From Vitrella brassicaformis CCMP3155 (Eukaryota; Protista; Chromerida): a stretch of DNA of 64,000 bases. How positions within the stretch are numbered: position 1 is the first letter of the stretch; every line of letters begins with the position of its first letter. Below the pieces are notes generated by a model, which saw only the letters and a list, made by a program, of their open reading frames with translations, had not been told where the DNA came from and searched no databases. The position numbers and the translations under genes are program-made. This document shows, one piece after another, positions 24,408-53,404 of this stretch. The stretch lies in assembly GCA_001179505.1 (NCBI GenBank), contig CDMY01000266.1, positions 1 through 64,000 of the forward strand. The letters run 5' to 3'.

Positions 24408-25545
24408 TCAGAACCACCCCCTGCGGCCGCTGAAGCGTGATCCCCAGCCGGTGCGACCGATGTGCCGGCTGCTGGGACGGCTGAAGATGCCGCCACTGAA
24501 CCGGGACCGACTCCTGCTGCCCACACGGACTGCCAGCACACACCAACCAAACCACCGGCCAAGAGAAAGACAGTCGCGCGTTAGGACAGTGCATGTGTTG
24601 GTGTCGGTGGCTGCTGCTTACATCCTCCCCCGCCCATCACGAGGCCCAGGCGGCGCCTGCTTTCGTCGTCATCGGCATCTCCGGCCTCCTCATATTCGAA
24701 TTCGCCACTGTCGATGACTGCGCCCTTCTCGTCGACCAACGAAAACTCGCCTGAGTGAACGGATGCCAGAGAGGAAGTGCGTGTCGGTCTGAGTGTATCT
24801 GTGGCTGGTGTGTGTTCGCTCACCAGGCTTTGTGATGAGTGTGTGTCCGAGTGAGAGGTGGAGCTCAGTCGTGTTGGTCGTCAGATCACGGAAGACGCCC
24901 TCAATGTTGTAGACACGCTCAGGGGCCCTGTCACCCAGCTGACAGCAAAAGGGAGAGGGACACGGAGAAAAAGGGATACCCATCCGCCACTCAGTGTGGT
25001 GTGTGCCTTCCATGCCCACGTTGATGTGGAGGGACTCCATCTTTTGGATCTCGTCGAGCGGGAGGAAGGCGAGGCCCTCCAAAGGCACACTGTCGAGTGC
25101 CTCGCTGAACCTCAAAGGCATGCTGTCCTTGCGGCTGACCAGCTGCTCGTCGTCGGACACCGTGATCTCCTTCGACACTGACAGACACACACGGCACACA
25201 CACACACAGATGGACGCCACATCCCTCCCACTTGCTGTCTGTGGCTGCGTACGCTGGATGGCGGCCAGCATGAGGCCGAACACACACGCGGCGGTCAGGA
25301 CGATGGCGCCCACGACGGCCAGCACTTTGAGTGCGGTGATGCGCTTGGGCTTCTCGGTGGCCAACGACACCTGGGGGGCCTCCAAATCACAAACCTGCAC
25401 ACACCAGCAGCACACAGACAGACAGACAGATAGGCAGACACACAGGAGGTAGGGATGGTGGCGGTGGGCATCAGGTTGGGTGAGAGAGCCATGTGTCAGT
25501 GGTCACCTTGCTGCCGATGGGCTGCTGGGCGGCGGAGTGGGCCAT
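24408..25545 (-). CDS. Type II membrane/secretory precursor with acidic spacer, RRRL site and cationic Gly/Arg tail (paralog 1)
   Basis: Six exons join in frame (~240 aa): MAHSAAQQPIGSK/VCDLEAP...KPKRITALKVLAVVGAIVLTAACVFGLMLAAIQ.../...EIQKMESLHIN/LGDRAPERVYNIEGVFRD.../GEFSLVDEKGAVIDSGEFEYEEAGDADDDESRRRLGLVMGGGG/FRVGSRSRSRFSGGIFSRPSSRHIGRTGWGSRFSGRRGWF*. Confidence 0.8.
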
Positions 25546-25757
25546 GGCGACAAACAAACGAGATGGCTGACGAGGGGAGGGACCGACAGCGACTTCGGGC
25601 AGAAGAGTGCTTGGCTGGGATTGAAGGCAGAAGTTGGTTTGAACCACAAGGAATGGGATGACAGGAGGATGGCGGCGGCTTTGGCGAGGCGGAGGGGAGG
25701 CGTTTGGGAGGGGTAGATGGCGTTCAACCCTTCAGCCGTTGATCGACCGTTGCTGGC
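24720..25757. repeat. Segmental duplication, direct orientation (partner ~51995-53077)
   Basis: Exons, most introns and ~200 bp upstream of the ATG are nearly identical between the two loci. Confidence 0.95.
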
Positions 25758-26220: not shown

Positions 26221-26966
26221 TCATCTCCTAGACTTGTTTGCGCCGAGGATGTCTTTGCCCGAGGTGGGCTTCGGTATGAATTTTGGGGGTCGGGGCCGCT
26301 TGATAGGCACAGCCGGGCGAGTGTTGCGCGGATCTGACAAACACACACAGACGATAGAAGCCATCGGCTTGTGCGTGCGCCCCTCCCTCCCTCCGTCCCT
26401 CTCCCCGGATTGCGTACAGCAGGTGAATACTCCTCGTGTGCTCCACTTGCACTCGCCCGAGCAGCACTGTGAGGTGAGTTCGCATCGGCCCCCGGTGGCA
26501 GTGCAGGCCGGGTTGCGCGGGTCAGGGACGTCCCGCGGCAAGGTAGGGGACGGAGGGGCAGCGGGGCTGTCGCCGCTGTCGGAACCTGCACACACATACA
26601 CACACACACACACACACAAGTGCAACCAAGACTGCAGTGGCCACACGTGTGGCGGGGTGGGCCGGACAGGCGGTACATTGCTGCCTTGGTGTTGGCGCAC
26701 CTTCAGGGCAGAGGAGGCATGACGACGCAAGGCAGCTCTGTGTGCCGCTGGTGCAGTACTCGACGACACCTGCGATCACCAAACGGACAGGCACAGTCAC
26801 AGTCAGCGGACCTGCGGCGGTCACCGTTGTGTGTACCTGAGCAGAGTCGGCCTGTTTTGCACTTGCAGGCCGCCTCGGAATTGGTGCACGTCTGCTGCGC
26901 CTGGGCCACCAGCACCCAAGCTGAAGTGGCGAGGACCAGAAGCAGGAAGGCCTTGCCAGTCACCAT
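26221..26966 (-). CDS. Small secreted cysteine-rich protein with a knottin (C-C-CC-C-C) module
   Basis: Four exons: signal peptide MVTGKAFLLLVLATSAWVLVAQA, an 8-Cys domain, a Pro-rich linker, CTATGGRCELTSQCCSGECKWSTRGVFTC and a basic Pro-rich tail YPRNTRPAVPIKRPRPPKFIPKPTSGKDILGANKSRR*. Confidence 0.8.
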
Positions 26967-32975: not shown

Positions 32976-35755
32976 TCAGTCCAGCCACCATCGGTGGACC
33001 ACTTCTTTCTCCTCGCCCCACTGGGTGGTCTCGAGCACATAGTTGGGGTGCAACGGAATGTGCGGCACATGCCAGCTCCCCGCATCTGCACACACACACA
33101 CACACACACATCTATTCATCCGGTGTCTGTCTGCCGGCCTGCCATTTGCCACATAAATACATACCACACATGGCGTATATTGCCTGGTTCTCCCCGACGG
33201 TTCCTCCCTTTTCCGTCTTCTCTGGCCGCCCCGAGCCGTCCACGGCCCCCCACCTCATGAGCCCAAACTCGATGGCCACCCAAGTGCCCTCGCCATACAG
33301 CCGGTGCTTGCAGTACGGATCGCTCTCTACCTGAAAGACACACACGAAACACAAGGAGGGAGGGAGGGAGGGAGGGAGGAAGGGAGGAGACATACCTTGG
33401 TTTGGGCGTGTGGGTTTCTGCGAGGCATCCGTCTGCCCTGCCAGCAGTTCCACATGTCGCAGCAGCCCGGCCCCCAGATGGCGAATAGGTTGGCCATGGG
33501 GAACTTGTTCTTGCCGACGTTCTTCTCGAACAGCTTGCAGGGCGTCCCCCACGGCCCCCCCACACTGGTGGTGTCCGGTTTCTCCCGGAACATGTCCACG
33601 AAGCGGGAGCCCTTGATTGGGCCAGAGGCCTCATTGAAGGGCATGGGCTCGGGGGCAGTGGCGTTGAGCAGAGCTATGAGCTCCTCCTGCTCTTCCTGTA
33701 GCTTCGCGAGCCTCTCTTGATACTCGGCATACTTATCTGGACTGATCAAGGGGTTCTTTAGCATCTCTTTGACGCGCTCCTCCTCCTGTCTTGTGGCCTT
33801 GAGCTGAACGCCGTGGAGCCGGCGCTTGAAGGAGGCCTTGCTCTTTTCCTGTTGCTTTTCCTTACCTGCATCATTTTTCCACCAGTCCTCCGGCAATGGG
33901 CTGTACTTGCTCTCCTCAATGAACGCAGCAGGCTGACCATGAGCACCAAGGGGTGTCCCATCTGAAGAAGAACTGTAGTAGGTCAGGATGGCACCCCTGC
34001 TGCTGCTGCTGCTGTCGTCCTCGTCGCCATGTGTCCACTGTGAGACGGTGTACCCCAGCTCTGTCGTGCCCTTGACCAGCAGCCTCACAGGCGTTGGCGC
34101 CGTGTGCAACGCCATGCGGGCAGTAGACAAGGGCTCAAGGATCGACGCCTCCTGGCCAAGAACCACTGTGCGGGTCCGCTTGCGCCCCGGTGTGGCGGTC
34201 TCGAAAAGATAGTCAGGCTCCATGTCTCTGTCTGGTGTCAACAGATCGGGAGACGCAGAAGGGCCGCGGCCATGCTGGACCATCATCTCGCCACTCAGCA
34301 GCAGTAGGGGAGGCGTCTCTCCCGCGTCATACTGTGAAGTCGACGAGCCACTTGTTGTGGAAGGGGGTCCGTGATGGCGCTTGACGTGGTCGCGTATATA
34401 CCGGAGCTCGCGAAGGACGGCGTCAGGCGGCATCATGTTGGCCGCCACAAGGGGTTGCGACGGCGCCGCCACCTCGACAAGGATCGGGTGCTGGAGATGG
34501 GGATGGACGCGGTCGGCTCTCGCGTTCATAGATGCGAGACGGCGGCTCTCAACCTGGCACGATGCCACCCTTCCTCCTCCTTCGGCCAGATGTCGTCTGT
34601 TCGCCTCCTGTGTCTCCGACAGGTGGACGGCCAGCACCAGTGCAGCCACGGGGGGAGGGGAGGGGGCAGAGGCAGAGACGTTCGTATTGTGGGTGGAGGC
34701 CCGTGAGACCTCCTTGTCGTTGCAAATCCACACATCCACGAGTGCGTCGTTGATCTGGGAGCCGAAACCAGCTACGGGGGCGAGCCGACGGCCCTCACGG
34801 TCTTCCACGAGGGCAAGAGCCAATTGGGAGGAAAGTGGCTGTCTCTTGTCGACGGGCATTGGGACAGGCGGCCACTGGACCATCTCCCGGTCAGGCGCTC
34901 TCCGTCTCTTTCTTCCTTTTTCTTTTGTAGGTCTCTCAGCCACAAAGACCACACCCATGGGAAGCTCCGAGGCGTTCTCGCTGCTCGACAGCAGCTGAGG
35001 CAGCATGTGTCTCTGCCACAAGAGGCCGTGTGTGGTGTTCGCCACTTGCTGCTGTGCCTGGAGCGCCTCAAGGGTCAGCAGCGGCACCGTGCTGCGAGAC
35101 AAAGCCGACAAAGACGCGAGGAACGGCGGCATTGTCGACCCACTATGCACCGGGGGCTCTGCCGGCGGTCCATCAGCCTCGTTGATCGGCGCTGGCATGG
35201 CCTCTGCTCTAACATTGCTGTGACGGGCCCCTGTAGAGCTTTCCCTTGGTCGTCGGCTGTCGATCTCCCTCTCGACATAAGGCAACAGATCCAGGGGGCC
35301 GCCATGGGGCGTCAGAAAGGGGGAAAAGAGCACCACCGGCGTCAGGCTGACCCACGGGCCTCCTGCTGCCGTCGGCTGCGGCGCACCACCCCGAGACATT
35401 TCCGTCTCGACATAGGTCCGTTTGGCCTTCTCGATGGCCGCTGATGGGGCAGCTCTCGTCTCGGGTGCCTGGCAGTCACCCTGTTGCTGGCCCCAGGGCG
35501 CACTGGCGCAGGTGGCGTTCATGTGGCTGGGGTGGGCCGTGTGCTGTGAATCCGAGAGCTGAAGGAGGCTAGGTGTGGCGCCGGTGGCTTTGAAAAGGCC
35601 GGAGTTTTTGTCGCACCCAGTGGCTGCTGGTGTGCTGTTTGCGAAGACCCTCTCCTTCAGCATGGGGCTGTCGTATATGTTGAAGGACCCCGTGCACCCA
35701 GCTGCAATGGCATGGCATGGCATGGCATGGGATGGGATGCAGCACATCTGCGTCA

Positions 35756-35806
<51 letters not shown>

Positions 35807-38800
35807 ACGTCTGCATCTCAGCTGTAGGTCGCTCCACTTGCCGTCGAGGCAGCGCAGCTCGCCGATCTGTCCCCCGTGGTATGTGTCGTAAAACATGGTG
35901 GGATAGTCCTCCGACATCCGGGGTGCGAACCGGGCACGCCAGTCGCATACCACCACATGGATATCACCAGGCTGCAAAACAGACAGACAGACAGACAGCC
36001 ACACCCCACACAAAATCTCTTGATTCGCATTGCTATGACGGCAGGCGAGGCGCACCTTTCGGGCAAACAAGTGTGTCTCTTCGGAGTCGACTTCGGCAAA
36101 GCTCTTGCCCAGAGCCCTCTCCGTTGCTGTGTCCGGCTGGAATATCGACTGCAGGATGCGGTAGGGCGAGAGGGCGCCCCACATGTCTCTGCACGCCTCA
36201 CGCGCACAGTACCTGAGATCAACCTGACTCACGGGCCTGGAGGGGCTCAGGGGCTTCATCTCCGCCACTCCCTCCACGAACGCAGTGGCGGTATTGTTGG
36301 AGTCCTTGCCATAGAGCGCCGCCGTGTCTTCGGGGTACTTTTTCTTGTAGCCTTCAATGATCTCTTTGTCCGTCTCTGTCGCGTTTGGCATCACCTCTCG
36401 CTCAAATTCCTCTGTGTTGTTGGGTTTGGTGCCTTCGAATTTCTGCTTGAAGCGGGCGGGTGCGGGGGCGTCCCCGACACGCCTGCGTCGCTCGGCGGCG
36501 AATTGTGTGAAGGGGTAGCAGACGTCTTCTTTGTTGTTGGGCGAGAGGTTCTCGTGGTACTCTTCGCAGAGCTCCTGCAGCTGCTTCCATACCGGCGGAC
36601 ACACATCTGCAGACAGACGCCCATCCCATCCACCCGTCGAGAAGGCACACCCCACCTGTATGTGTGTGTCGCATTTCTGCTCACGCTGGCACTTGAGTGG
36701 TGGTGCGGACCAGACGCCGTCTCTGCACGTGACTATGGCGTACTTCTCGTCTGTCTGGGAGTCGGTCATTACGCCCTCGGCGTCGATCGCCCACCATCCC
36801 CTTCGGTGACCCTTGTACTCACCAGCCAGATCACTGCACGCGCACACATACGGGTCACAGAGACATCAGCCACCACAAACACTGGCGCCGGTACCGTTTC
36901 GCATTGCAGAAGAGCCTTCTCGTCACGCCATGGGGCAGCGTGGCGGCTCCCTCCTCAGTACGTGCCCCCCGCTGGCTCATGGCGGTCTGTATGACGGCAT
37001 GCTTCGGGATGTCCACCTCCAGCATGTGAGCCTCTGGCGGCCTGGGCTTCAGGAACTCGGCACACTTGCCTGCAGAACAAACAAGACAGGAGCCATGCAT
37101 GTCTCGATGGATGTATGTGTGTGTGGATGTTTTGGCTGGCTGACGGTAGCAGTAGAGTTCTCTGCCGGACCAGTGCCCGTCTTCGCATACGACGATGTCC
37201 ACTGGGTCGATCTTGAACCAGTCGACCTCTGTGTTGTCGCCCTCCTCGCCCACCCAGGGGCGGGTGAACTCCTCTTCGGGACCCGACAGACGCTCCACTT
37301 GCTGACAAATCGACACACGGACACACACACAGGTGATGGAGACACACACGTGTCTGTGTGTGTGTGTGTACTGCCGAGTGTGTCTTTTGGCATTTGAATC
37401 GCCGCTGTGTGCCGTGGTAGACGACCGCCTGGTCGTTGGTGAGCTCCTCCTCCTGCAGAGCATACCCCCCGCCGGCAGTCATGTTCAGCTCCAACCGCAC
37501 GTCGTTCAAACACGCCTCTGCGCCAAACAAGACAACACACACAGGTGTTCATCACCCAAGCTTGCGGCAAGCAGTAGCAGCTGATTACTTTTGCAGCTGA
37601 GAGGCATCATGTTGGTCTTCATGATAGATGGGACAGTCCAGTTGCCGTCGTAGCAGACGAAGGTCATGCGGGCCCGGGGGTCCCCGTTGTGGAAGTACAT
37701 GCGGTCGGTGCGGCAGTCTATCTCCACTCGCGCGTTGTGCACCGCAGGAACCTCCCACTTGTGCAGACGCACCTCCGCTACAGCTGCACACACACACACA
37801 CACACACATCGACACTCTCCATCCCTCTCTCTCTCTCTCCCTCTCTCTTTTCTTGAGGTTACGTGTGAAGTTGTAAGGCTGGCCCGGCACGGTTGCGGTG
37901 CAATTCTGGTCATCAGGGTCGCCGAATAGGAAGAAGCCCTCGGTGTTGACCTTCACACTGGTGCCGGGGTTCCCACCGTGCGGCAGTCCACCTTGTGGTC
38001 GGCGTAGTTCCAGGAGCAGACGTACTCGTAGTCGGTCGCATTCAGCACATTCTTGGTCGTGGCTGTGTGGTTGCCACTGTCGCCCCCTCCTGCTAATGCG
38101 TTGTGCGCCTCCCTCCCCTGTCTGTGCAGCAGCCCGCATTGTTCAGTGGGGGGTGGTCTTGCGCTTGTGGATGCGTGTGGTGTTGCACTCGGTGGTGTCC
38201 CACAGGGTGATCATGGTCTCCTCCCCTGTCTCCGTCACGTTGGGCAGCATGAGGGTGGTGCAGGTCACTGTGTGGTCGGAGTAGCGGAACTCACACCGCC
38301 ACTCGTGGCTGAGCGTGTCGTTGGCCCCGTGTGTCGCCTCTTTGCACCGTGGACGCACCGTCGCATGGACAAAGAAGTCCTCCTCCTTACCTACAGAAAA
38401 AGAGAGACAGTCCGTGTGTGTGTGTGTGTGTGTATGTGTGTGTCAGGTGAGTGACCTGTGTGTGGGTCTGATCCACCCGGTGGCTCCCATGCCGATGGGC
38501 AACCCCTCAGGGGCTGTCTCGTTGGTGCCCTTGATGGGCTCGTCGGGCGGCGGCGTGGGGATCACCGGCTCCGCGTCTGAAAAGCACAACATGACACGAG
38601 AGACACGAGGCCCTCTCTCGTGCTCGCCGTGCGGTGAGAGGGTTGTGTTTACCCTGTTTGTCGAACCAGTTGTAGCGCTCAACGTCGAGGGATATCACCC
38701 GGTCCGCACGGGGGCAATTTTCTGAACACATAATCACATCAGGAGCTCGGAATACTCACCACCACCATGGACGGGACGTGCTTTGATCTGCTTACTGAAG

Positions 38801-41800
38801 CATCCGAGATCGAGAGCCTCCCACTTGCCGTCGTCACAGTAGAGCTTGGTGCTGTGCACCTGCACCCCCAGGCCCGCGTCGTACCCCTCGGCACACTTGA
38901 GCTTCCGCCAGTCGCCGTGAAGCTTCCCCTCCCCCTCGATCTCATACGCCCACGCCGGCACGGGAAGCGGGAACTCGGGACAATCACCTGCATTAAGAGC
39001 ATTAACATACACACAAAGGGAAAGAGTACACCATTGTTTCTCTGTTGTGCCTGCTGACCTTTGCAGTCGAGCAGAGTTTCGGTCCAGATGCCGTCATCGC
39101 ATTTGATGACGTCGCGGCCGTATGGCGGCCCCGATGCGCTCGACATGCCCTCCTGGCACCTCACATGCACGAGTGTGTCGGGGGGAGACGTGGCCCCGGG
39201 GGGGAACCCCTCGTCCGTCACGTACACATAACGCTCCGGATTCAGCACCAAAGGGCCACACTGCTCTGCGATGCAGAGGCACACAGAAAAAGGAAGGCAT
39301 CCATTCATCCATCCGCCCACGCTGTCTGTGTTGGCATGGCTCACGTCGGCAAAAGAGGTTGACGGCGGTGAAGTTGCCCTGCTCGCAGTATACGGTGGTG
39401 GGCTGGGCTGTCCCCAAGACCGGCTGGGTGGGCCGCCCAGCGCCGGGGAGGCCCCGCGAGGCCTTGTTGGCCACCCCACACATGAGAGTGACGCACCCCC
39501 CAGAGGGGAAGGTGTCGGGGGTGGAGGAAGGGTCGCTCTTGGCCAGGATGTAGTACCCGTCACTCGCTTTGAGCCACTCACGCATGTCGTTGTAGTCACA
39601 TCTCTCTGAGACAAGCAAACACAAAGAGAGAACACACAGAGAGAGGGAGAGGGATGGATGGAGACACATGCATGGTGACGCATAAGTACTCACTCTCGCA
39701 TCCGAGGGTGACAGCGGTGAAGGTGCCGTTGATGCAGGTGATGTGCTGCCTCCCCTCTCTCAGCTCCTCGGGCGCCTCCCCGTACATCATCTGCAAAGCC
39801 TTCCGGTGCTCAGCGTCCACGTCGGCGTCGATGTCGCACAGGTGACGCACCCCTGCGTCGCTCGAGCAAGACACCCGTAGCTGCGTGCCGTGGGGGAAGG
39901 TGCTGCTGAGCAAAGCCTGCCAGGCCACCGTCTGGCCCGCTGCATCGACAAGGGCTTCAGATGGGGCGGGCGGGGGCATGATGCCTCCCCTGTCCTCTGC
40001 TGTCTCTTCGGGAGTTTTCTTCTCCACAAAGGTCAAGGAAGGCATCCGCTGGATGAGCGCCTCTTTCGTGCACTCGCCTGAGTGAGAGATATAGACAGAC
40101 AGCCGAGAGAGCAACCAGCCAGCCGCTGGTTGTCTTTTGTGTGCTCTGCTCGCTCACTTACGTCCGCATCTCAGCCATATCTTCGACCAGGACTCGTTGA
40201 TGCATTTGGTGGTGGTCAAGTCGGTCTCGATGCCCGTAGCGGGGTGCCACGACTCCCCAGCCACGTCAGACGACCGGCACTTGAGCTTCACCTCCGTCTT
40301 GTGCCGGGGATATGCGCTCCAGTCGATCCCACCGGTCGTCTCGTTGACTATGAGCGTGGCGTTGGGCCCGGCTAGGACCTTTGCTGCGTCTTGGGGTTCG
40401 GCTGGCTCGTACTGATAGGCAATGGGGCAGAGCATGTGTTCGAGCGGAGGGGGCGCATCGGGGTGTGGGAGGAAGTAGAGCAGAGGGCAGGCACCTGACG
40501 AGCAAAACCAACCAACCACAGCAACCAGCCACAGCAGTGGACGCATTGCATTCCCTCTCCACCCTCCTTGGCGTACGTCTGCACACGATGGCGAGGAACG
40601 ACCAGTTGCCTTCGCCGCACACGACAGCGGCCGAGTTCTGCCCCGCCACAGGGAAGAAGCCGTCCTCCGTCGCACAACGGACGGACCGCAGAGTGCCCGA
40701 CTTGAGGGGCCTGGCGTAGGGGAACGGGGCGAATGGCGGCTCGGACGTCACCACATATCCCGGCTTAGCAGTGTACTCGCGGGGACAGGGACCTGACACA
40801 GTCATGAGGTCATTTTGCAGGTCTTTGGTGTTTGGTGTGCGTCCGTTGGTACGTTTGCAGATGAGCGTCTTGTCGGTGTAAAAGCCGTCGAGGCACCGGA
40901 TGACCTCCCACTGGATCAGCGTGTCCACGTCCGGGGTCCGCCCCGCCGCACACGTGACGTTGATCTCTGCCCCGTGGTGCCACGCCACCTGACCGCCGCT
41001 TGGCGGGCGGATGAAGGTCGTCACATACGCCGGACCCAGGTGTGGAGGCCCCTCGCAGTTCTCTGCAAATAACGGAGAGACAATTGGATGAAGTCCGTGC
41101 GTCGCTCGCTGCCTCCCCTTCTCTCTGCCTGGTTGTTGTATCCCTCTGTCACTCACTCACTCACTCACTCATGCAGACGAGTAGGAATGGTGTCCACCTG
41201 CCATGGCTGCAGGTGATCCGCTCGGGTGTCTCTGCCTGCGCGGGATAGTACCCGTCACGACACGAGAGCTCGACTGAGAATAAAAGCCTCAAAACATTGG
41301 TCAGTGAGGGAATACATGAACTTCTGATCTTACAGGTGCTGCCGTGCGACCGCTCCCGGTACGCCACATGGCCGGTGCCCTCTTGGGTCAGCTCCAGGCG
41401 ATACCGCTCTCCGGAGAAGGACGGCAGGGGGTCGCAGTACTCTGCAAAAGCCACCCACCCAACACCCATTTGCAAGCTGGTGGAGGTCGATGTCTCTGCT
41501 CGCTCACTGGCACATTCGAATGTGTGGGCGCTCCATCTGCCGTCGACGCAGTAGACGTCCTCAGTTGTCACATCCCGGCTCGTGGGGCTGCCCGCTCCCA
41601 GATCGCATGACAATCTCCGCCTCGACCCATGTGCCAGTCGTCCGTTGCTAGGAAATGACTCGACGTGATAGAGAGAGGGCAGCGCGGGAAAGGATGGGCA
41701 GTCCGCCGCACAGTCAAGTGTCCGCTGATCGAAGGACCCAAACCTGCACTTGAGCAGGTCAGCGGCCGCTGTATCCACCCCGGGCCCCTCTGTGCCGTTG

Positions 41801-44800
41801 ACAGCCATGGGAGACGCACCAGGGGCGCACTCCAGCCGCACCTCAGAGTTGTGATACACATACGGGGGGATGCCCCGCCACCCTCTCGCCACGTTCTGGT
41901 TCTCGAGGGGCTTGGGCGCTGGGGGCGGGTTGATGAGCTCCTGGTAGGTTGGCCTGAAGGATGTGTGGCCGATGTCTGCGGCGTAGGTCCACTCCTGTGT
42001 GTATCGGGGGTTGCGCCCGAGCGTCTTGAAGAGGTCTGTGGGGCAGGAGGGTGCGCACTCGAGGTTGGCGAGCTCCCACTGGTCGATGGGGTTGACCGCG
42101 CCCACACAGGTGATGTTGACGGCCTCGTCCGATGGATGTCGCACGTCGAGCGACACACTGTGGTAGCCGAGGGACCTGTCGCACCTACGCACAATACAAT
42201 ACCATGCACGAGACTGCACACAGAAATGAACAACGTCGCCGACTGACCTCACAGTGACAACGGTGAGAGGTCTGAATGTGTCGGGGTAGCGCTCGGGGTT
42301 GTCGGGGTCTGGCAGCGCTGGCGACCAGAGGGAGTAGTTTGCTCGCCGGAGAGCCACCAGGTAGTCGCTGTCACACGTGCCTGCATGACAACGTGATATG
42401 CATGCCACACACTGCGAGAAGGCCTTCAAGGAAACGCTCACGTCGACATTCGAGCGTTCTGGCCGTCCAGTGCCCCTCAAGACACGTCAGCACATCGGTG
42501 TCATGAGCCGTGATGGCCTCAAACGACTGTGCCGTGTCGCACGCAATGGTCCGGGTGGCCCCGTGCGAAAGGTCCAGGCGGTCGCCCTCAAACACGTAAC
42601 CCTCATAGGGCAGGAAAGGCTCCTCCGTACAGGAGGCTGACACACACACACAGAGAGAGAAGCCGTGTGTGCAGGAGAGGCAGGCAGGCAGGCGGACCTT
42701 TGCATGTGAGCTTGGGTGTCTGGTATTCCGACTCGGCGCACAGGATCTGTTCGGCGGTGGTGTTGGGGGTGATGGACATGTAGCCCTCTGCGCACTCGAC
42801 CCTCGAGACGTCCCCGTGTTTGTTGCCGCCGTAGGTGACCTTGTAGCCCTTCCTCTCAGACATCGGCAGCTCCGCCTCACCTGGACAATGCTCTGATATG
42901 CAAACACACACACACGCACACACACATACACAAGAAATAGTGGGTAGAAAATGGGCAGAGACACCTACAACCCACCGATGCATTGAAGGGTGAGTTGCGG
43001 CGTCCAGTGTCCCGACACGCACCAGACCATCTGTGTGGCCTCTGAGCACTCCTCCCCCCGGTTGCGACAGAAGGGCACCGCCTCCAGTGGGTTGCACCCG
43101 ATCTCGATCCAGTCCCGGTTGGCCACCACGTCCTGCAGACGACCGCTGCCCTCTGCCGTGTGGGAGGTCCGCAGAATCAGATAAGGGGAGGGAGGCGGCT
43201 CGTACGGCGGACAGGGGCTGTCACAAAGACAGACAGACAAACAGGTGTGAGCCAGCCATTGTGTGTGTCTCTTCGTTTGCTGTGCTGACTTTCGCATACA
43301 AAGTTGAGAGGGGTCCACTCGCCGTGTAGGCAGTAGACAATGGCGTACTGCGCGTGGCTGCTGGCGGCGTGTGGCTCCACACAGCTGATGTTGCGGTAGG
43401 ACATGTGCTCCAGCGACTCCAGGGATCGCGGCTTGACACCGGCGGGCAGAGACACGTGATACAGACTGTCACCCAAGTCGGGATACTCTGGGCACTTGTC
43501 TGTCACACACACGCGCGCGCATTGGGTGCACTGAAGCCCTGTTGTGTCTCTGTGGGGGTACCAGACCTTCGCAGTGCAGTCCCGGTTCGGTATATTGCCC
43601 ATCGACACAGGTGACAGTCCGCTCGACGGGCGGTATGCCCAAGGTGACCTCTGCGCCTCCCTTGCACCTCACCTTGACCACCGTGCCGTGGGCCTTGTCG
43701 TGCGTCTCGGGGCCCGACACGGCATACGGCAGGCCCTGACGGTTCACCTCTTCCATGTAGGGACGAACGCAATCCTCTGACAGAGGGAGACAAAGAGAGA
43801 ATTGGGATTGGTCCGCTCTGTTCGTGTGGCGGCCGAACTTTTGCAGACGGTCTCAGGCGGCATCCACTGGCCGTCGCTCTCGCAGTAGATGATCTCCTTC
43901 TTCCGGTACCGCCTTGTCGACGAGTACCCCCGCTGGCACGCCAGCACACGGTAGTCCCCCGCCGCGCGACCCTCTGTGCCCTCGTCGTACTCCGTCGTCA
44001 AATGCCTCTCGTTGAATTTGTACTTTTCGATGTACCTGCCCCACGCAGGACACAACTCTGAGGAAGAAGACAGAGAGAGAGGGAGAGATGCGCGCAGGGG
44101 TGGGGCTGGGTGTGTGCTCTGTGTGTGTGTGTGTGTGTTTGCTGACAGCTGTTCTGACTTCTGCAGTTGCATGCGCAGTTGGTCTCGGCTTCCGTCTTGT
44201 CGCCCCCATCGCACTCCTCACCAGACTCGACTATGCCGTTGCCGCATATGGCCGTCCGGCCTGCACGAAGACGATCCACAGCACAAACACACACACATGC
44301 GTCGTGGTGGGCATACAGGACGTTGTACTTGAACTGTATACCTAGAATGTAGTTGAGGTCTCTCACGGCTTCGGGCATCTCCTTTTCCGGCTCGAATGTG
44401 CGGAAGGGGATGGCCGCCAGCCGCACGTCACCTGCAGCCATCCACATGAAGCATGGGTGGACGTGCTGGTGAAAGAAATGGGCTGGCTACCCAACCGTGG
44501 AAGCAGTTGAAGTCGTCTGCGTCGCATCCGATGGATAAACCTGCCAGTCTCGGTCAGATTGGCCGTCGTCCCCTCGGTCGCCAGCAGACGGCCCCCTGCC
44601 GGCGTCAGCTCCTTCTCCTCGCGAAACACGTGCACCTGCACGCATCAAAGCTCTTGACGTCACCCATCGTGTGTGTCTTAATTATACACACATACTCGGT
44701 AGTTTCCATCGGCAGTAGGCGCGATTGTGAAGCCATACAGCTGCGGGCGGCCCCAGCAGGCGCTCACCATCACGCTCTCCCGCGACATGGGGACATCTAC

Positions 44801-51559: not shown

Positions 51560-52846
51560 TCACCACCAGCCCCTGCGGCCCCAGCCACGGCGGTATCCCC
51601 CGTGGCCCCAGCCGCCGAAGCGCCGGTATCCCCCGTGGTAGCCCCTGCCGTAGAAGCGCCGGCCGTAGTAGCCCCGGCGGCCGAAACGAGAGCGGCCGAA
51701 ATAAGAGCGGCCGAACATACCGCGGGAGCGTCCGAGCTTCAGACCACCAACTGACGAGCACGCAGACACACACAGAGAGGCCAAGATGAGCCACAGGCGA
51801 TGCTGCTTGGTGGTCTAGCTGATGACTGTCTGTGTACTCACATATGCCGAAGAGGCCCAGTCGGCGTCTGCTGGCCTGCTCGTCGGTGGCGGCCTCATCG
51901 TCATCGTCATCGGCTGTGTCGGCCTCCTCTTTGCTGAGCTTCTCGACTTCCTCGTCGGTGAGGAACTCGTATTCGTAGTCGCCGCTGTGGATGACCGCAC
52001 CCTTCTCGTCGACCAACGAGAACTCGCCTGAGTGAATGGATGGCCACAGACATACAGAGGCACGGAGAGTGCGTGTCGGCCTGCGCCTGTATGTGTGTGG
52101 TTCGTGGATTGCTCACCAGGTTTGGCGATGAGTATGTGTCCGAGTGAGAGGTGGACCTCAGTCGTGTTGGTCGTCAGATCACGGAAGACGCCCTCAATGT
52201 TGTAGACACGCTCAGAGGCCCTGTCACCCAGCTGACAGCAAAAGGGAGAGGGACACAGAGAAAAAGGGATGCCCATCCGCCACTCAGTGTGTGCCTTCCC
52301 CCGTGGCTCGCTTACGTTGATGTGGAGGGACTCCATCTTTTGGATCTCGTCGAGCGGGAGGAAGGCGAGGCCCTCCAAAGGCACACTGTCGAGTGCCTCG
52401 CTGAACCTCAGAGGCATGCTGTCCTTGCGGCTGACGAGCTGCTCGTCGTCGGACACCGTGATCTCCTTCGACACTGACGGACACACACACACACACACAC
52501 AGATGGACACCACACCCCTCCCACTTGCTGTCTGTGGCTGCGTACGCTGGATGGCGGCCAGCATGAGGCCGAACACACACGCGGCGGTCAGGACGATGGC
52601 GCCCACGACGGCCAGCACCTTGAGTGCGATGGTGCGCTTGGGCTTCTTGGTGGCCAACGACACCTGGGGGGCCTCCAAATCACAAACCTGCACACACCAG
52701 CAGCACACAGACAGACAGACAGACAGACAGGCAGACACACAAGAAGTAGGGATGGTGGCGGTGGGCATCAGGTTGGGTGAGAGAGCCATGTGTGTGTCAG
52801 TGGTCACCTTGCTGCCGATGGGCTGCTGGGCGACGGAGTGGGCCAT
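51560..52846 (-). CDS. Type II membrane/secretory precursor with acidic spacer, RRRL site and cationic Gly/Arg/Tyr tail (paralog 2)
   Basis: Same six-exon structure as 24408-25545; ends …SGDYEYEFLTDEEVEKLSKEEADTADDDDDEAATDEQASRRRLGLFGI/FGGLKLGRSRGMFGRSYFGRSRFGRRGYYGRRFYGRGYHGGYRRFGGWGHGGYRRGWGRRGWW*. Confidence 0.82.
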
Positions 52847-53077
52847 GGCGACAAACAAACGAGATGGCTGACGGGAGGAAGACCGACCAGGGACTTCGGG
52901 CAGAAGAGTGCTTGGCTGGGATTGAAGGCAGAAGTTGGTTTGAACCACGAGGTTGATGGAGATGGGGAGGAAGGCGGCGGCCTTCTGGTGGGAGGGAGGG
53001 GAGGGGAGGGAGAGGGAAGGCGTTGGGAGGGGTAGATGGAAGGCGTTCCGACTTTTGCCCTCCGACCGTTGCTGGCC
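51995..53077. repeat. Segmental duplication, direct orientation (partner ~24720-25757)
   Basis: Near-identical exons, introns and upstream region. Confidence 0.95.
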
Positions 53078-53404
53078 AACTTGACCGTTGCAAAAGTTCC
53101 TGGCCGGGATGCTTGTGTGTGAAGATGAATGCACGTCAGGCCCAGTTTGGGACCCAGTCCGTGTTCTGACGATCCACTGCACACCAAACGATGTCACTCA
53201 CAGAGTCTGGCTGCATGGTGTGGTCCTGGCGATTTCCCTCTCCAGCCACTTCTGACACAGCAGCCTGACTGAGTCTGAAGTGCTGCCGAGGCACCGCGCC
53301 AGCGACACACCAGCCAGCCCGCCACTCAGACATTCAGTGGCTATGGCGTATGTACGTACGTATGTATGCACGGCTGTATACAGTAGGTAGCACTATCTAC
53401 GTAT

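What the first reader, a model, noticed from the sequence alone, without database searches (positions are those of the whole stretch)
51560..52846. Paralog 2: longer +17 Gly/Arg/Tyr peptide with a matching longer acidic spacer
Seen: after RRRL a predicted 68-aa peptide (16 Arg + 1 Lys, no acidic residue, rich in G/Y/F/W, internally repeated GRS.F and HGGYRR, ending GRRGWW like paralog 1's GRRGWF). The spacer has grown to 18 acidic residues and 2 Lys (net -16). Spacer and tail charges therefore match in both copies (-10/+10 and -16/+17) although their sequences differ. Inference: compensatory co-evolution, which supports intramolecular masking of a toxic or condensing cargo peptide.
Basis: partly seen in the sequence, partly recalled or inferred. 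Interest (0 to 1): 0.8.

Follow-up and report, generated by a model that had tools for sequence, protein, structure and literature searches.

The report
Membrane-tethered peptide precursor cut at Arg-x-Leu
This alga, a free-living relative of malaria parasites, transcribes a gene for a membrane-anchored precursor in which an acidic stretch balances the charge of a very basic glycine/arginine/aromatic tail; between the two lies an Arg-x-Leu site conserved across relatives, the motif parasite proteases cut.

Summary
Window 52846..51560 (minus strand) is a six-exon Vitrella brassicaformis gene. All five introns are seen spliced in contigs of three runs, so the tail frame stands.

The 276-aa product has these parts:
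- a short N-terminus and one membrane helix;
- an orphan beta domain of about 100 aa;
- a 43-aa spacer (net -16);
- RRRL;
- a 68-aa tail (16 Arg, 1 Lys, no acidic residue).

The charge match extends to three further close paralogs: -16/+17, -10/+10, -8/+8, -5/+4, -10/+7 (r = -0.96, n = 5). It fades in 16 distant relatives (r = -0.28).

An exhaustive profile search found the family in many more Vitrella genes and in Piridium, Siedleckia, Rhytidocystis and Polyplicarium. The only invariant luminal column in 21 sequences is the Arg of an R-x-L motif, and the Leu is at least 90% conserved. The RQL, RNL and RHL variants exclude a dibasic convertase site. They fit PEXEL/TEXEL (plasmepsin V/ASP5) or diatom RXL processing.

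Best reading: a charge-neutralised, membrane-tethered precursor that releases a polycationic peptide. I lean slightly to a defence role over a wall-building role. Cleavage and function are untested.

The scan had already flagged RxL-fenced precursors on other DNA of this genome, and paralog 1 in this window.

The parts
51560..52846 (-). Paralog 2 coding region, six exons: 52808-52846, 52546-52687, 52316-52473, 52117-52231, 51842-52027, 51560-51750 (stop codon 51560-51562)
   Evidence: Model built. All five introns are seen spliced in contigs of X1, X2 and X8; DNA run X3 is unspliced.
52550..52630 (-). Membrane helix (residues about 33-59), read as a signal anchor with the N-terminus in the cytosol
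   Evidence: AlphaFold helix 33-64. The N-flank is net +3 (KKPKR) and the C-flank net -3, read from the translation. The topology is inferred from the positive-inside rule.
51999..52473 (-). Conserved luminal beta domain (residues about 61-161, exons 3 to 5a), including an N-T-T sequon invariant in the five close paralogs
   Evidence: Alignments A1 and A2. In the model on 21 sequences the core strands have pLDDT 86-93. No Pfam or NCBIfam hit and no clear fold match. Sequon count.
51870..51998 (-). Acidic spacer, residues 162-204: 18 Asp/Glu and 2 Lys, net -16, partly helical in the model
   Evidence: Counts; helix 176-190; 6-nt x 3 repeat encoding the Asp run.
51858..51869 (-). RRRL (residues 205-208), the proposed R-x-L cleavage site
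   Evidence: Invariant in the five close paralogs. R206 is the only invariant column and L208 is at least 90% conserved in 21 luminal sequences. R-x-L sits at the aligned column in 16 of 17 distant complete members, against 5.1 expected to hold one anywhere.
51563..51857 (-). Tail peptide, residues 209-276 (interrupted by intron 51751-51841): net +17, Gly/Arg/aromatic, ends GRRGWW
   Evidence: tandem DNA repeats; pLDDT below 50, so probably disordered.
51966..53024 (-). Block shared with paralog 1 (24689-25724). Identity is 96-99% from exon 1 to exon 3 (introns included), falls to 73-80% in introns 3-4, and is nil beyond the start of the spacer
   Evidence: blastn; per-segment identities.
24408..25545 (-). 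Paralog 1 (= public protein P0002, 234 aa): same architecture, spacer -10, RRRL, tail +10

Best explanation
The gene encodes a single-pass membrane precursor with its N-terminus in the cytosol and the rest in the lumen of the secretory pathway. The luminal part has four pieces: a conserved small beta domain, an acidic spacer, an R-x-L site (here RRRL), and a disordered 68-residue Gly/Arg/aromatic tail.

Proposed mechanism (inferred, not shown): an R-x-L-specific endoprotease cuts after the Leu and frees the tail. The candidate is the plasmepsin V/ASP5-type aspartyl protease of this lineage, or the still unidentified RXL endopeptidase type known from diatoms. The anchor, the domain and the spacer stay on the membrane.

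Before the cut, the spacer cancels the tail's charge, so the whole protein is net about 0. This would keep a very sticky polycation from binding membranes or polyanions, or from condensing, inside the cell. Spacer and tail both change by tandem-repeat slippage, and in this subfamily their charges track each other.

The freed peptide would act outside the cell as a polycation. I lean slightly to a defence (antimicrobial-like) role for this subfamily, about 45:35 over a wall or matrix-building role.
For: Shown:
- The gene is transcribed, and the splicing fixes the tail frame.
- The architecture is shared by five close paralogs.
- It is also shared by about 17 distant relatives, in Vitrella, Piridium, Siedleckia, Rhytidocystis and Polyplicarium.
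- The Arg of R-x-L is the only invariant luminal residue, and the Leu is at least 90% conserved.
- R-x-L is at the aligned junction in 16 of 17 distant members. Composition alone predicts 5.1 with any R-x-L, giving P about 1e-9 if the sequences are treated as independent.
- RQL, RNL, RHL and RTL variants show the site is not dibasic.
- A 21-nt island encoding S-R-R-R-L-G-L, with only synonymous differences, is the sole DNA likeness left between the 3' halves of paralogs 1 and 2.
- Charges match in all five close paralogs.

From papers:
- TgASP5 needs Arg at P3 and P2 and Leu at P1, cuts after Leu, and also works far from the N-terminus, as in MYR1 (PMC4764566).
- The diatom Sil1p precursor has an acidic domain followed by basic peptides ending RRIL or RRNL, and RXL is taken as a general cleavage motif there (PMC4557024).
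- Charge balance between propiece and mature peptide is an established idea for defensins and frog peptides (PMC7073735).
Against: - No peptide-level evidence of cleavage exists.
- Whether Vitrella has a plasmepsin V/ASP5-type enzyme was not tested here. The only pointers are an unchecked scan note and the inclusion of Vitrella sequences in a published aspartyl protease tree (PMC8540915).
- The P2' position is not E/Q/D in this subfamily, so it is not a classical PEXEL.
- Charge matching rests on five related genes and is not significant in distant members.
- The topology is inferred; no signal-peptide predictor was available.
- The conserved domain has no known fold or function, so its role (escort, chaperone or sorting) is guesswork.
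Confidence: 0.55

Rival explanations
1. Wall or matrix-building precursor. The freed Gly/aromatic/Arg peptide is a structural 'sticker' polymer. It would condense with polyanions or be cross-linked through Tyr into the thick sporangial wall, like Eimeria GAM56/GAM82 tyrosine-rich peptides or diatom silaffins. Antimicrobial action plays no part.
For: Tails of distant relatives are near neutral and Tyr/Pro/Gly-rich, often with a Cys pair, and some tail motifs are conserved across species. P0003 and P0004 tails are 22-23% Tyr. The family occurs in lineages that build resistant cyst walls. Vitrella has oocyst-wall-protein domains (PMC4501334). GAM56/82 are processed to small Tyr-rich peptides that are cross-linked (PMC2726925). 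Silaffin precursors combine an acidic domain, RRxL sites and basic peptides (PMC4557024).
Against: Paralog 1's tail has no Tyr at all, and P0006's has only 3. Tails of close paralogs share almost no sequence. Several tails start with short hydrophobic or amphipathic heads, for example in P0004, which look more like membrane-active peptides. No localisation data exist.
Confidence: 0.3
2. Uncleaved membrane protein. The tail stays attached as a surface-exposed low-complexity adhesive or wall-anchoring region, and R-x-L is conserved for a structural or binding reason.
For: Cleavage has not been shown. The N-terminal half is highly conserved, and some relatives carry a cytosolic EF-hand. That suggests the anchored part has a function of its own.
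Against: A three-residue motif that is the single most conserved luminal feature, placed exactly at the border between an acidic linker and a hypervariable tail, is typical of a processing site. The same motif is a proven cleavage site in related organisms (PMC4764566, PMC4557024).
Confidence: 0.15
3. Kexin/furin-type dibasic processing. Cuts after RRR and after the many internal RR pairs would chop the tail into several short peptides, as in a neuropeptide-like polyprotein.
For: RRRL contains a dibasic pair. The paralog 2 tail has five internal RR pairs.
Against: Relatives have RQL, RNL, RHL or RTL at the aligned site, with no dibasic pair. The Leu is at least 90% conserved. None of the internal RR pairs of paralogs 1 and 2 is followed by Leu.
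Confidence: 0.08
4. BRICHOS-like system. The conserved luminal domain is a chaperone of the BRICHOS type that guards an aggregation-prone C-terminal peptide, as in Bri2/ITM2B or worm arenicin precursors.
For: The overall layout is the same: an N-terminal membrane anchor, a luminal domain of about 100 aa, a basic cleavage site and a C-terminal peptide. The comparison is from my own knowledge of Bri2 and BRICHOS antimicrobial precursors.
Against: There is no Pfam BRICHOS hit. The domain has no Cys, whereas BRICHOS has a conserved pair. No BRICHOS structure appears in the fold searches, whose best matches are Z 6.2-6.4 to unrelated small beta proteins and Foldseek E >= 0.02.
Confidence: 0.05

Closest known systems
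PEXEL/TEXEL substrates of plasmepsin V (Plasmodium) and ASP5 (Toxoplasma)
   Same: A luminal R-x-L (here R-R-L) motif in a secretory-pathway protein of the same wider lineage. Arg at P3 and Leu at P1 are the most conserved positions. ASP5 substrates can carry the site near the C-terminus (PMC4764566).
   Different: The host is a free-living alga with no host cell to export into. P2' is not E/Q/D in this subfamily. The precursor is anchored by an N-terminal membrane helix. Neither cleavage nor the protease is shown here.
Diatom silaffin Sil1p and other RXL-processed biosilica proteins
   Same: An acidic pro-region is followed by strongly basic peptides that are delimited by RRIL/RRNL-type sites. 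RXL is taken as a general endopeptidase motif (PMC4557024).
   Different: There is no sequence relation. Silaffins are Lys/Ser-rich repeats behind a cleavable signal peptide and serve silica formation, whereas Vitrella is not silicified. Here there is a single Arg/Gly/aromatic tail behind a folded domain.
Charge-neutralised antimicrobial peptide precursors (alpha-defensins, frog dermaseptin-type, cathelicidins)
   Same: An anionic propiece balances a cationic C-terminal peptide. The pro-region is conserved while the mature peptide is hypervariable. The net charge balance idea is described in PMC7073735.
   Different: There is no homology. A membrane anchor replaces the cleaved signal peptide, and R-x-L replaces KR or elastase-type sites. 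No activity data exist.
BRICHOS precursors (Bri2/ITM2B, proSP-C, arenicin/alvinellacin)
   Same: The domain order is the same: anchor, luminal domain, basic site, C-terminal peptide.
   Different: The domain is not BRICHOS by Pfam, by Cys pattern or by fold search.
Eimeria GAM56/GAM82 tyrosine-rich wall-forming proteins
   Same: A conserved N-terminal part is joined to a divergent Tyr-rich part that is processed to small peptides for a resistant wall (PMC2726925). The organisms are related.
   Different: There is no homology. This tail is only 10% Tyr, paralog 1's has none, and it is strongly cationic.

Membership tests
PEXEL/TEXEL-type substrates (plasmepsin V / ASP5) | R-x-L (TEXEL: R-R-L) motif in the luminal part of a secretory protein | tested here: met
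   RRRL at residues 205-208, downstream of a membrane helix. R is invariant and L at least 90% conserved in 21 sequences.
PEXEL/TEXEL-type substrates (plasmepsin V / ASP5) | E/Q/D at P2' (classical PEXEL R-x-L-x-E/Q/D) | tested here: not met
   In the five close paralogs the residues after Leu are GL, GL, GF, IV and DP. Some EF-hand relatives have RQLQE-type sites. ASP5 itself does not need P2' (PMC4764566).
PEXEL/TEXEL-type substrates (plasmepsin V / ASP5) | Cleavage after Leu by the clade D aspartyl protease, and presence of that enzyme in the organism | not testable with these tools
   No proteomic data are available and I had no referenced ASP5 or PMV sequence to search with. The only pointers are the unchecked scan note s1-201876 and the inclusion of Vitrella in the tree of PMC8540915.
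Anionic-propiece antimicrobial peptide precursors | Propiece net charge balances mature peptide net charge | tested here: met
   The pairs are -16/+17, -10/+10, -8/+8, -5/+4 and -10/+7, with r = -0.96. The relation is not significant in distant members.
Anionic-propiece antimicrobial peptide precursors | Cleavable N-terminal signal peptide and sequence membership in a known AMP family | tested here: not met
   A 32-residue N-terminal region is followed by a helix of about 27 residues. No Pfam or NCBIfam family matches.
Anionic-propiece antimicrobial peptide precursors | Antimicrobial activity of the released peptide | not testable with these tools
   This needs a synthetic peptide and MIC assays.
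BRICHOS precursors | BRICHOS domain (Pfam model, conserved Asp and Cys pair, BRICHOS fold) | tested here: not met
   No Pfam hit, no Cys in the domain, and no BRICHOS chain among the fold matches.
Diatom RXL-processed silaffin-type precursors | Acidic pro-region, RXL sites, basic product | tested here: met
   compared with the Sil1p description in PMC4557024. This is a likeness of layout only.
Diatom RXL-processed silaffin-type precursors | Lys/Ser-rich repeat units and association with biosilica | tested here: not met
   The tail has 1 Lys and 3 Ser in 68 residues and is Arg/Gly/aromatic. That Vitrella is not silicified is from my own knowledge.

The most novel reading that the evidence does not exclude
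This family is a set of native substrates of the ancestral plasmepsin V/ASP5-type protease in a free-living photosynthetic relative of Apicomplexa and in early-branching apicomplexans. R-x-L cutting would then have arisen to mature secreted wall or defence peptides from charge-neutralised, membrane-tethered precursors, and only later have been recruited for host-cell export in parasites.
Probability: 0.3. Interest if true: 0.8.

Novelty: new variant of a known kind. Interest (0 to 1): 0.62.

Why it matters
The origin of the PEXEL/TEXEL processing pathway, which malaria and Toxoplasma parasites need to remodel host cells, is an open question. This family is an unnamed protein family shared by a free-living alga and early-branching apicomplexans. 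Its single invariant luminal residue is the Arg of an R-x-L motif, at the border between an acidic linker and a hypervariable tail. That gives a concrete, easily testable substrate set for asking what this cleavage did before parasitism.

It also offers a natural series of five paralogs in which an acidic linker and a polycationic Arg/aromatic/Gly tail change charge together. Such a series is useful for studying how cells carry sticky, condensation-prone or membrane-active peptides safely through the secretory pathway.

Tried and rejected
- **Family libraries.** Pfam and NCBIfam gave only sub-threshold noise. This held for the exon pieces, for an uninterrupted ORF spanning exons 1-4 and for the public proteins.
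- **PDB sequence profile search.** Nothing.
- **Fold searches on two models.** The best matches were Z 6.2-6.4 to unrelated small beta proteins and weak polo-box rows at Foldseek E >= 0.02, all below the noise levels the tools state. BRICHOS was rejected on this basis.
- **ESM Atlas feature search.** No usable hit.
- **Metagenome contig scan with the family profile.** No confirmed locus.
- **Third word search with the 22-sequence alignment.** It was swamped by low-complexity words and added nothing.
- **Neighbourhoods of P0003 and P0006.** No further paralogs within 10 kb on either side.
- **Source lookups for P0007 and P0010.** They gave only sample codes, no organism.
- **Bacterial WG-repeat proteins.** They hit the last beta hairpin of the profile. 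I treated this as short-motif likeness, not kinship.
- **Plasmepsin V/ASP5 in Vitrella.** I could not test for it, because I had no referenced query sequence.
- **Joined spliced model.** It was built only inside local scripts for translation, charge counts and one local comparison against the window. It was not sent to any database search. Those searches used exon references, the uninterrupted ORF or public protein ids.

Full report
**What is there**

The window is GC-rich eukaryotic DNA with short GT..AG introns. Protein hits identify it as Vitrella brassicaformis CCMP3155, a photosynthetic relative of Apicomplexa.

On the minus strand, 52846 to 51560, I built a six-exon model of 831 nt and 276 aa. 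Contigs of three public runs from two studies (X1, X2, X8) carry exactly these joints:
- 51750|51842;
- about 52026|52116;
- 52231|52316;
- 52469|52546;
- about 52685|52806.

Each skipped stretch has GT..AG ends on the minus strand. A DNA run (X3) carries the unspliced sequence. GC3 is highest (0.81) in the coding frame of exon 6.

**Anatomy of the product**

- Residues 1-32 form a short N-terminal region ending in KKPKR.
- Residues about 33-59 form a hydrophobic helix. Flank charges of +3 before and -3 after predict the N-terminus in the cytosol and the rest in the lumen. This is an inference.
- Residues about 61-161 form a conserved domain. With a 21-sequence alignment it models as a six-stranded antiparallel sheet plus a helix, with core pLDDT 86-93. 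It carries an N-T-T sequon that is invariant in the close paralogs.
- Residues 162-204 are the spacer: 18 Asp/Glu and 2 Lys, net -16.
- Residues 205-208 are RRRL.
- Residues 209-276 are the tail: R16, K1, no acidic residue, G23, Y7, F7, W4, ending GRRGWW.

Tandem DNA repeats underlie both variable parts. The tail holds a 36-nt unit x 2.1 and two 15-nt arrays x 2.6. The Asp run of the spacer holds a 6-nt unit x 3.

**Paralogs and the charge test**

Paralog 1 lies at 24408-25545 (= P0002). The two genes share a 1.06-kb block. It is 96-99% identical from exon 1 to exon 3, introns included. Identity falls to 80% in intron 3 and 73% in intron 4, and nothing alignable remains from the start of the spacer onward.

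This gradient suggests gene conversion of the 5' half over older, freely diverging 3' halves. Downstream, the only remaining DNA likeness is a 21-nt island encoding S-R-R-R-L-G-L, with only synonymous differences, and the last codons (G-R-R-G-W-W/F).

Word searches found three more close Vitrella paralogs, P0003, P0004 and P0006. P0003 and P0004 are also seen as transcripts.

| Gene | Spacer net | Tail net |
|---|---|---|
| Paralog 2 | -16 | +17 |
| Paralog 1 (P0002) | -10 | +10 |
| P0003 | -8 | +8 |
| P0004 | -5 | +4 |
| P0006 | -10 | +7 |

- Pearson r is -0.96, and only 4 of 120 pairings do as well.
- Whole-protein net charge is between -4 and +2.
- Both sister pairs (paralog 1 with paralog 2, P0004 with P0006) differ in the matching direction.

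The sample is five related genes, so this is suggestive and not proof.

**The wider family and the R-x-L site**

Pfam, NCBIfam, the PDB sequence search and the fold searches left the protein open. I therefore ran the exhaustive profile search.

It returned about 17 distant relatives with the same order of parts: membrane helix, the domain, a spacer, then a low-complexity tail. They come from:
- further Vitrella genes, including a subfamily with a cytosolic EF-hand;
- Piridium sociabile;
- the blastogregarine Siedleckia nematoides;
- Rhytidocystis pertsovi;
- the gregarine Polyplicarium;
- unidentified transcript assemblies.

In the alignment of 21 luminal parts, the only invariant column is Arg206, and Leu208 is at least 90% conserved. 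R-x-L sits at the aligned junction in 16 of 17 distant complete members, usually as the only R-x-L after the domain. Shuffles predict that 5.1 members would hold one anywhere. That gives P about 1e-9, ignoring relatedness.

The variants are RRL, RQL, RNL, RHL and RTL, so the conserved element is not a dibasic convertase site. It is the P3-P1 pattern of PEXEL/TEXEL. TgASP5 strictly needs Arg-Arg-Leu, cuts after Leu, and also acts far from the N-terminus (PMC4764566). Diatoms use RXL, including RRIL and RRNL in the silaffin precursor, which also pairs an acidic domain with basic peptides (PMC4557024).

Earlier notes of this scan had flagged several R-x-L-fenced secreted precursors on other DNA of this genome, and one unchecked note reports a plasmepsin V/ASP5-type gene. 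I reached the R-x-L reading from papers and the alignment before I saw those notes. They are leads, not support. The silaffin comparison came from them, and I checked it in the paper.

**Limits of the charge idea**

In the 16 distant members the spacer/tail relation is weak (r = -0.28, not significant). Clear mismatches include -3/+14, -10/+4 and -9/0. Their tails are mostly near neutral and Tyr/Pro/Gly-rich, often with two Cys, and some tail motifs are conserved across species.

Strong cationic charge with a matched acidic spacer is therefore a derived trait of the five-gene Vitrella subfamily. What the whole family shares is the tethered domain, the R-x-L site and an aromatic, low-complexity tail.

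**How it most likely works**

*Shown:*
- the gene is transcribed, and the spliced frame is confirmed;
- the architecture is shared across the family;
- the R-x-L site is conserved;
- charges match in the subfamily.

*Inferred:*
- the luminal topology;
- cleavage after Leu208 by an R-x-L-specific protease;
- release of the 68-residue polycation;
- neutralisation by the spacer before cleavage.

The principle of a charge-balanced propiece is known from defensins and frog peptides (PMC7073735).

What the freed peptide does is open. Three points favour a defence role:
- the tails are hypervariable behind a conserved pro-region;
- the composition is Arg plus aromatic residues;
- several tails begin with short hydrophobic or amphipathic heads.

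Three points favour a wall or matrix role:
- the tails of distant relatives are Tyr/Pro/Gly-rich;
- the host lineages build cyst walls, and Vitrella has oocyst-wall-protein domains (PMC4501334);
- GAM56/82 (PMC2726925) and the silaffins are precedents.

I lean about 45:35 to defence for this subfamily.

**Comparison and novelty**

The protein is not a member of any named family:
- it is not BRICHOS, because there is no Pfam hit, no Cys pair and no fold match;
- it belongs to no known antimicrobial peptide family;
- it is not a silaffin.

It works like a charge-neutralised propeptide precursor and carries a PEXEL/TEXEL-like site. I rate it a new variant of a known kind. The family, the membrane tether with an orphan domain, and an R-x-L conserved from a free-living alga to early apicomplexans all appear undescribed; every public record reads 'unnamed' or 'uncharacterized'.

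The joined spliced model was assembled only in local scripts, for translation, charge counts and one local comparison with the window. Database searches used exon references, an uninterrupted ORF reference (window:52106-52846:-) or public protein ids. The joined-model search step was left out.

Noticed in passing
window 51815-53197 (minus): Introns 1-3 of paralog 2 are in frame and free of stops. A mechanical 460-aa ORF therefore reads through them. P0005 (ENA, 160 aa) looks like such a read-through model of a P0003-like gene.
   Followed up: partly
window 51966-53024 versus 24689-25724: There is an identity gradient between the two paralogs. It is 96-99% in exons 1-3 and their introns, 80% in intron 3 and 73% in intron 4, and nil beyond the start of the spacer. 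This pattern is expected from gene conversion of the 5' half. The public transcript protein P0001 joins paralog 1-type 5' variants to the paralog 2 3' half, probably because the assembly collapsed across this block.
   Followed up: partly
proteins P0014, P0022, P0039, P0043, P0032, P0033, P0035 (Vitrella, other contigs): A subfamily carries a cytosolic EF-hand before the membrane helix. It is followed by the same luminal domain, an R-x-L-Q site and a short tail with a Cys pair. This hints at calcium-linked control of the anchored half.
   Followed up: no
proteins P0020 (Siedleckia), P0010, P0013; and P0007, P0009, P0023: Outside Vitrella the tails are not random. One group shares a YGCG...PYYYRPFFGYGYPLVGT block and another shares MTC(I/V)NCGLYYGG. 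Tails are therefore conserved within subfamilies across species.
   Followed up: no
proteins P0015-P0018, P0021 and others: Bacterial WG-containing beta-repeat proteins (PF14903) match the last hairpin of the family profile in 5-8 stretches each. This is probably a short beta-hairpin motif likeness.
   Followed up: partly
window 26419-26505 and 32976-44290: Between the two paralogs, first-stage notes list a knottin-like secreted peptide and a giant array of about 22 sushi/CCP-like modules. The region is therefore rich in secreted-protein genes. I did not examine them.
   Followed up: no
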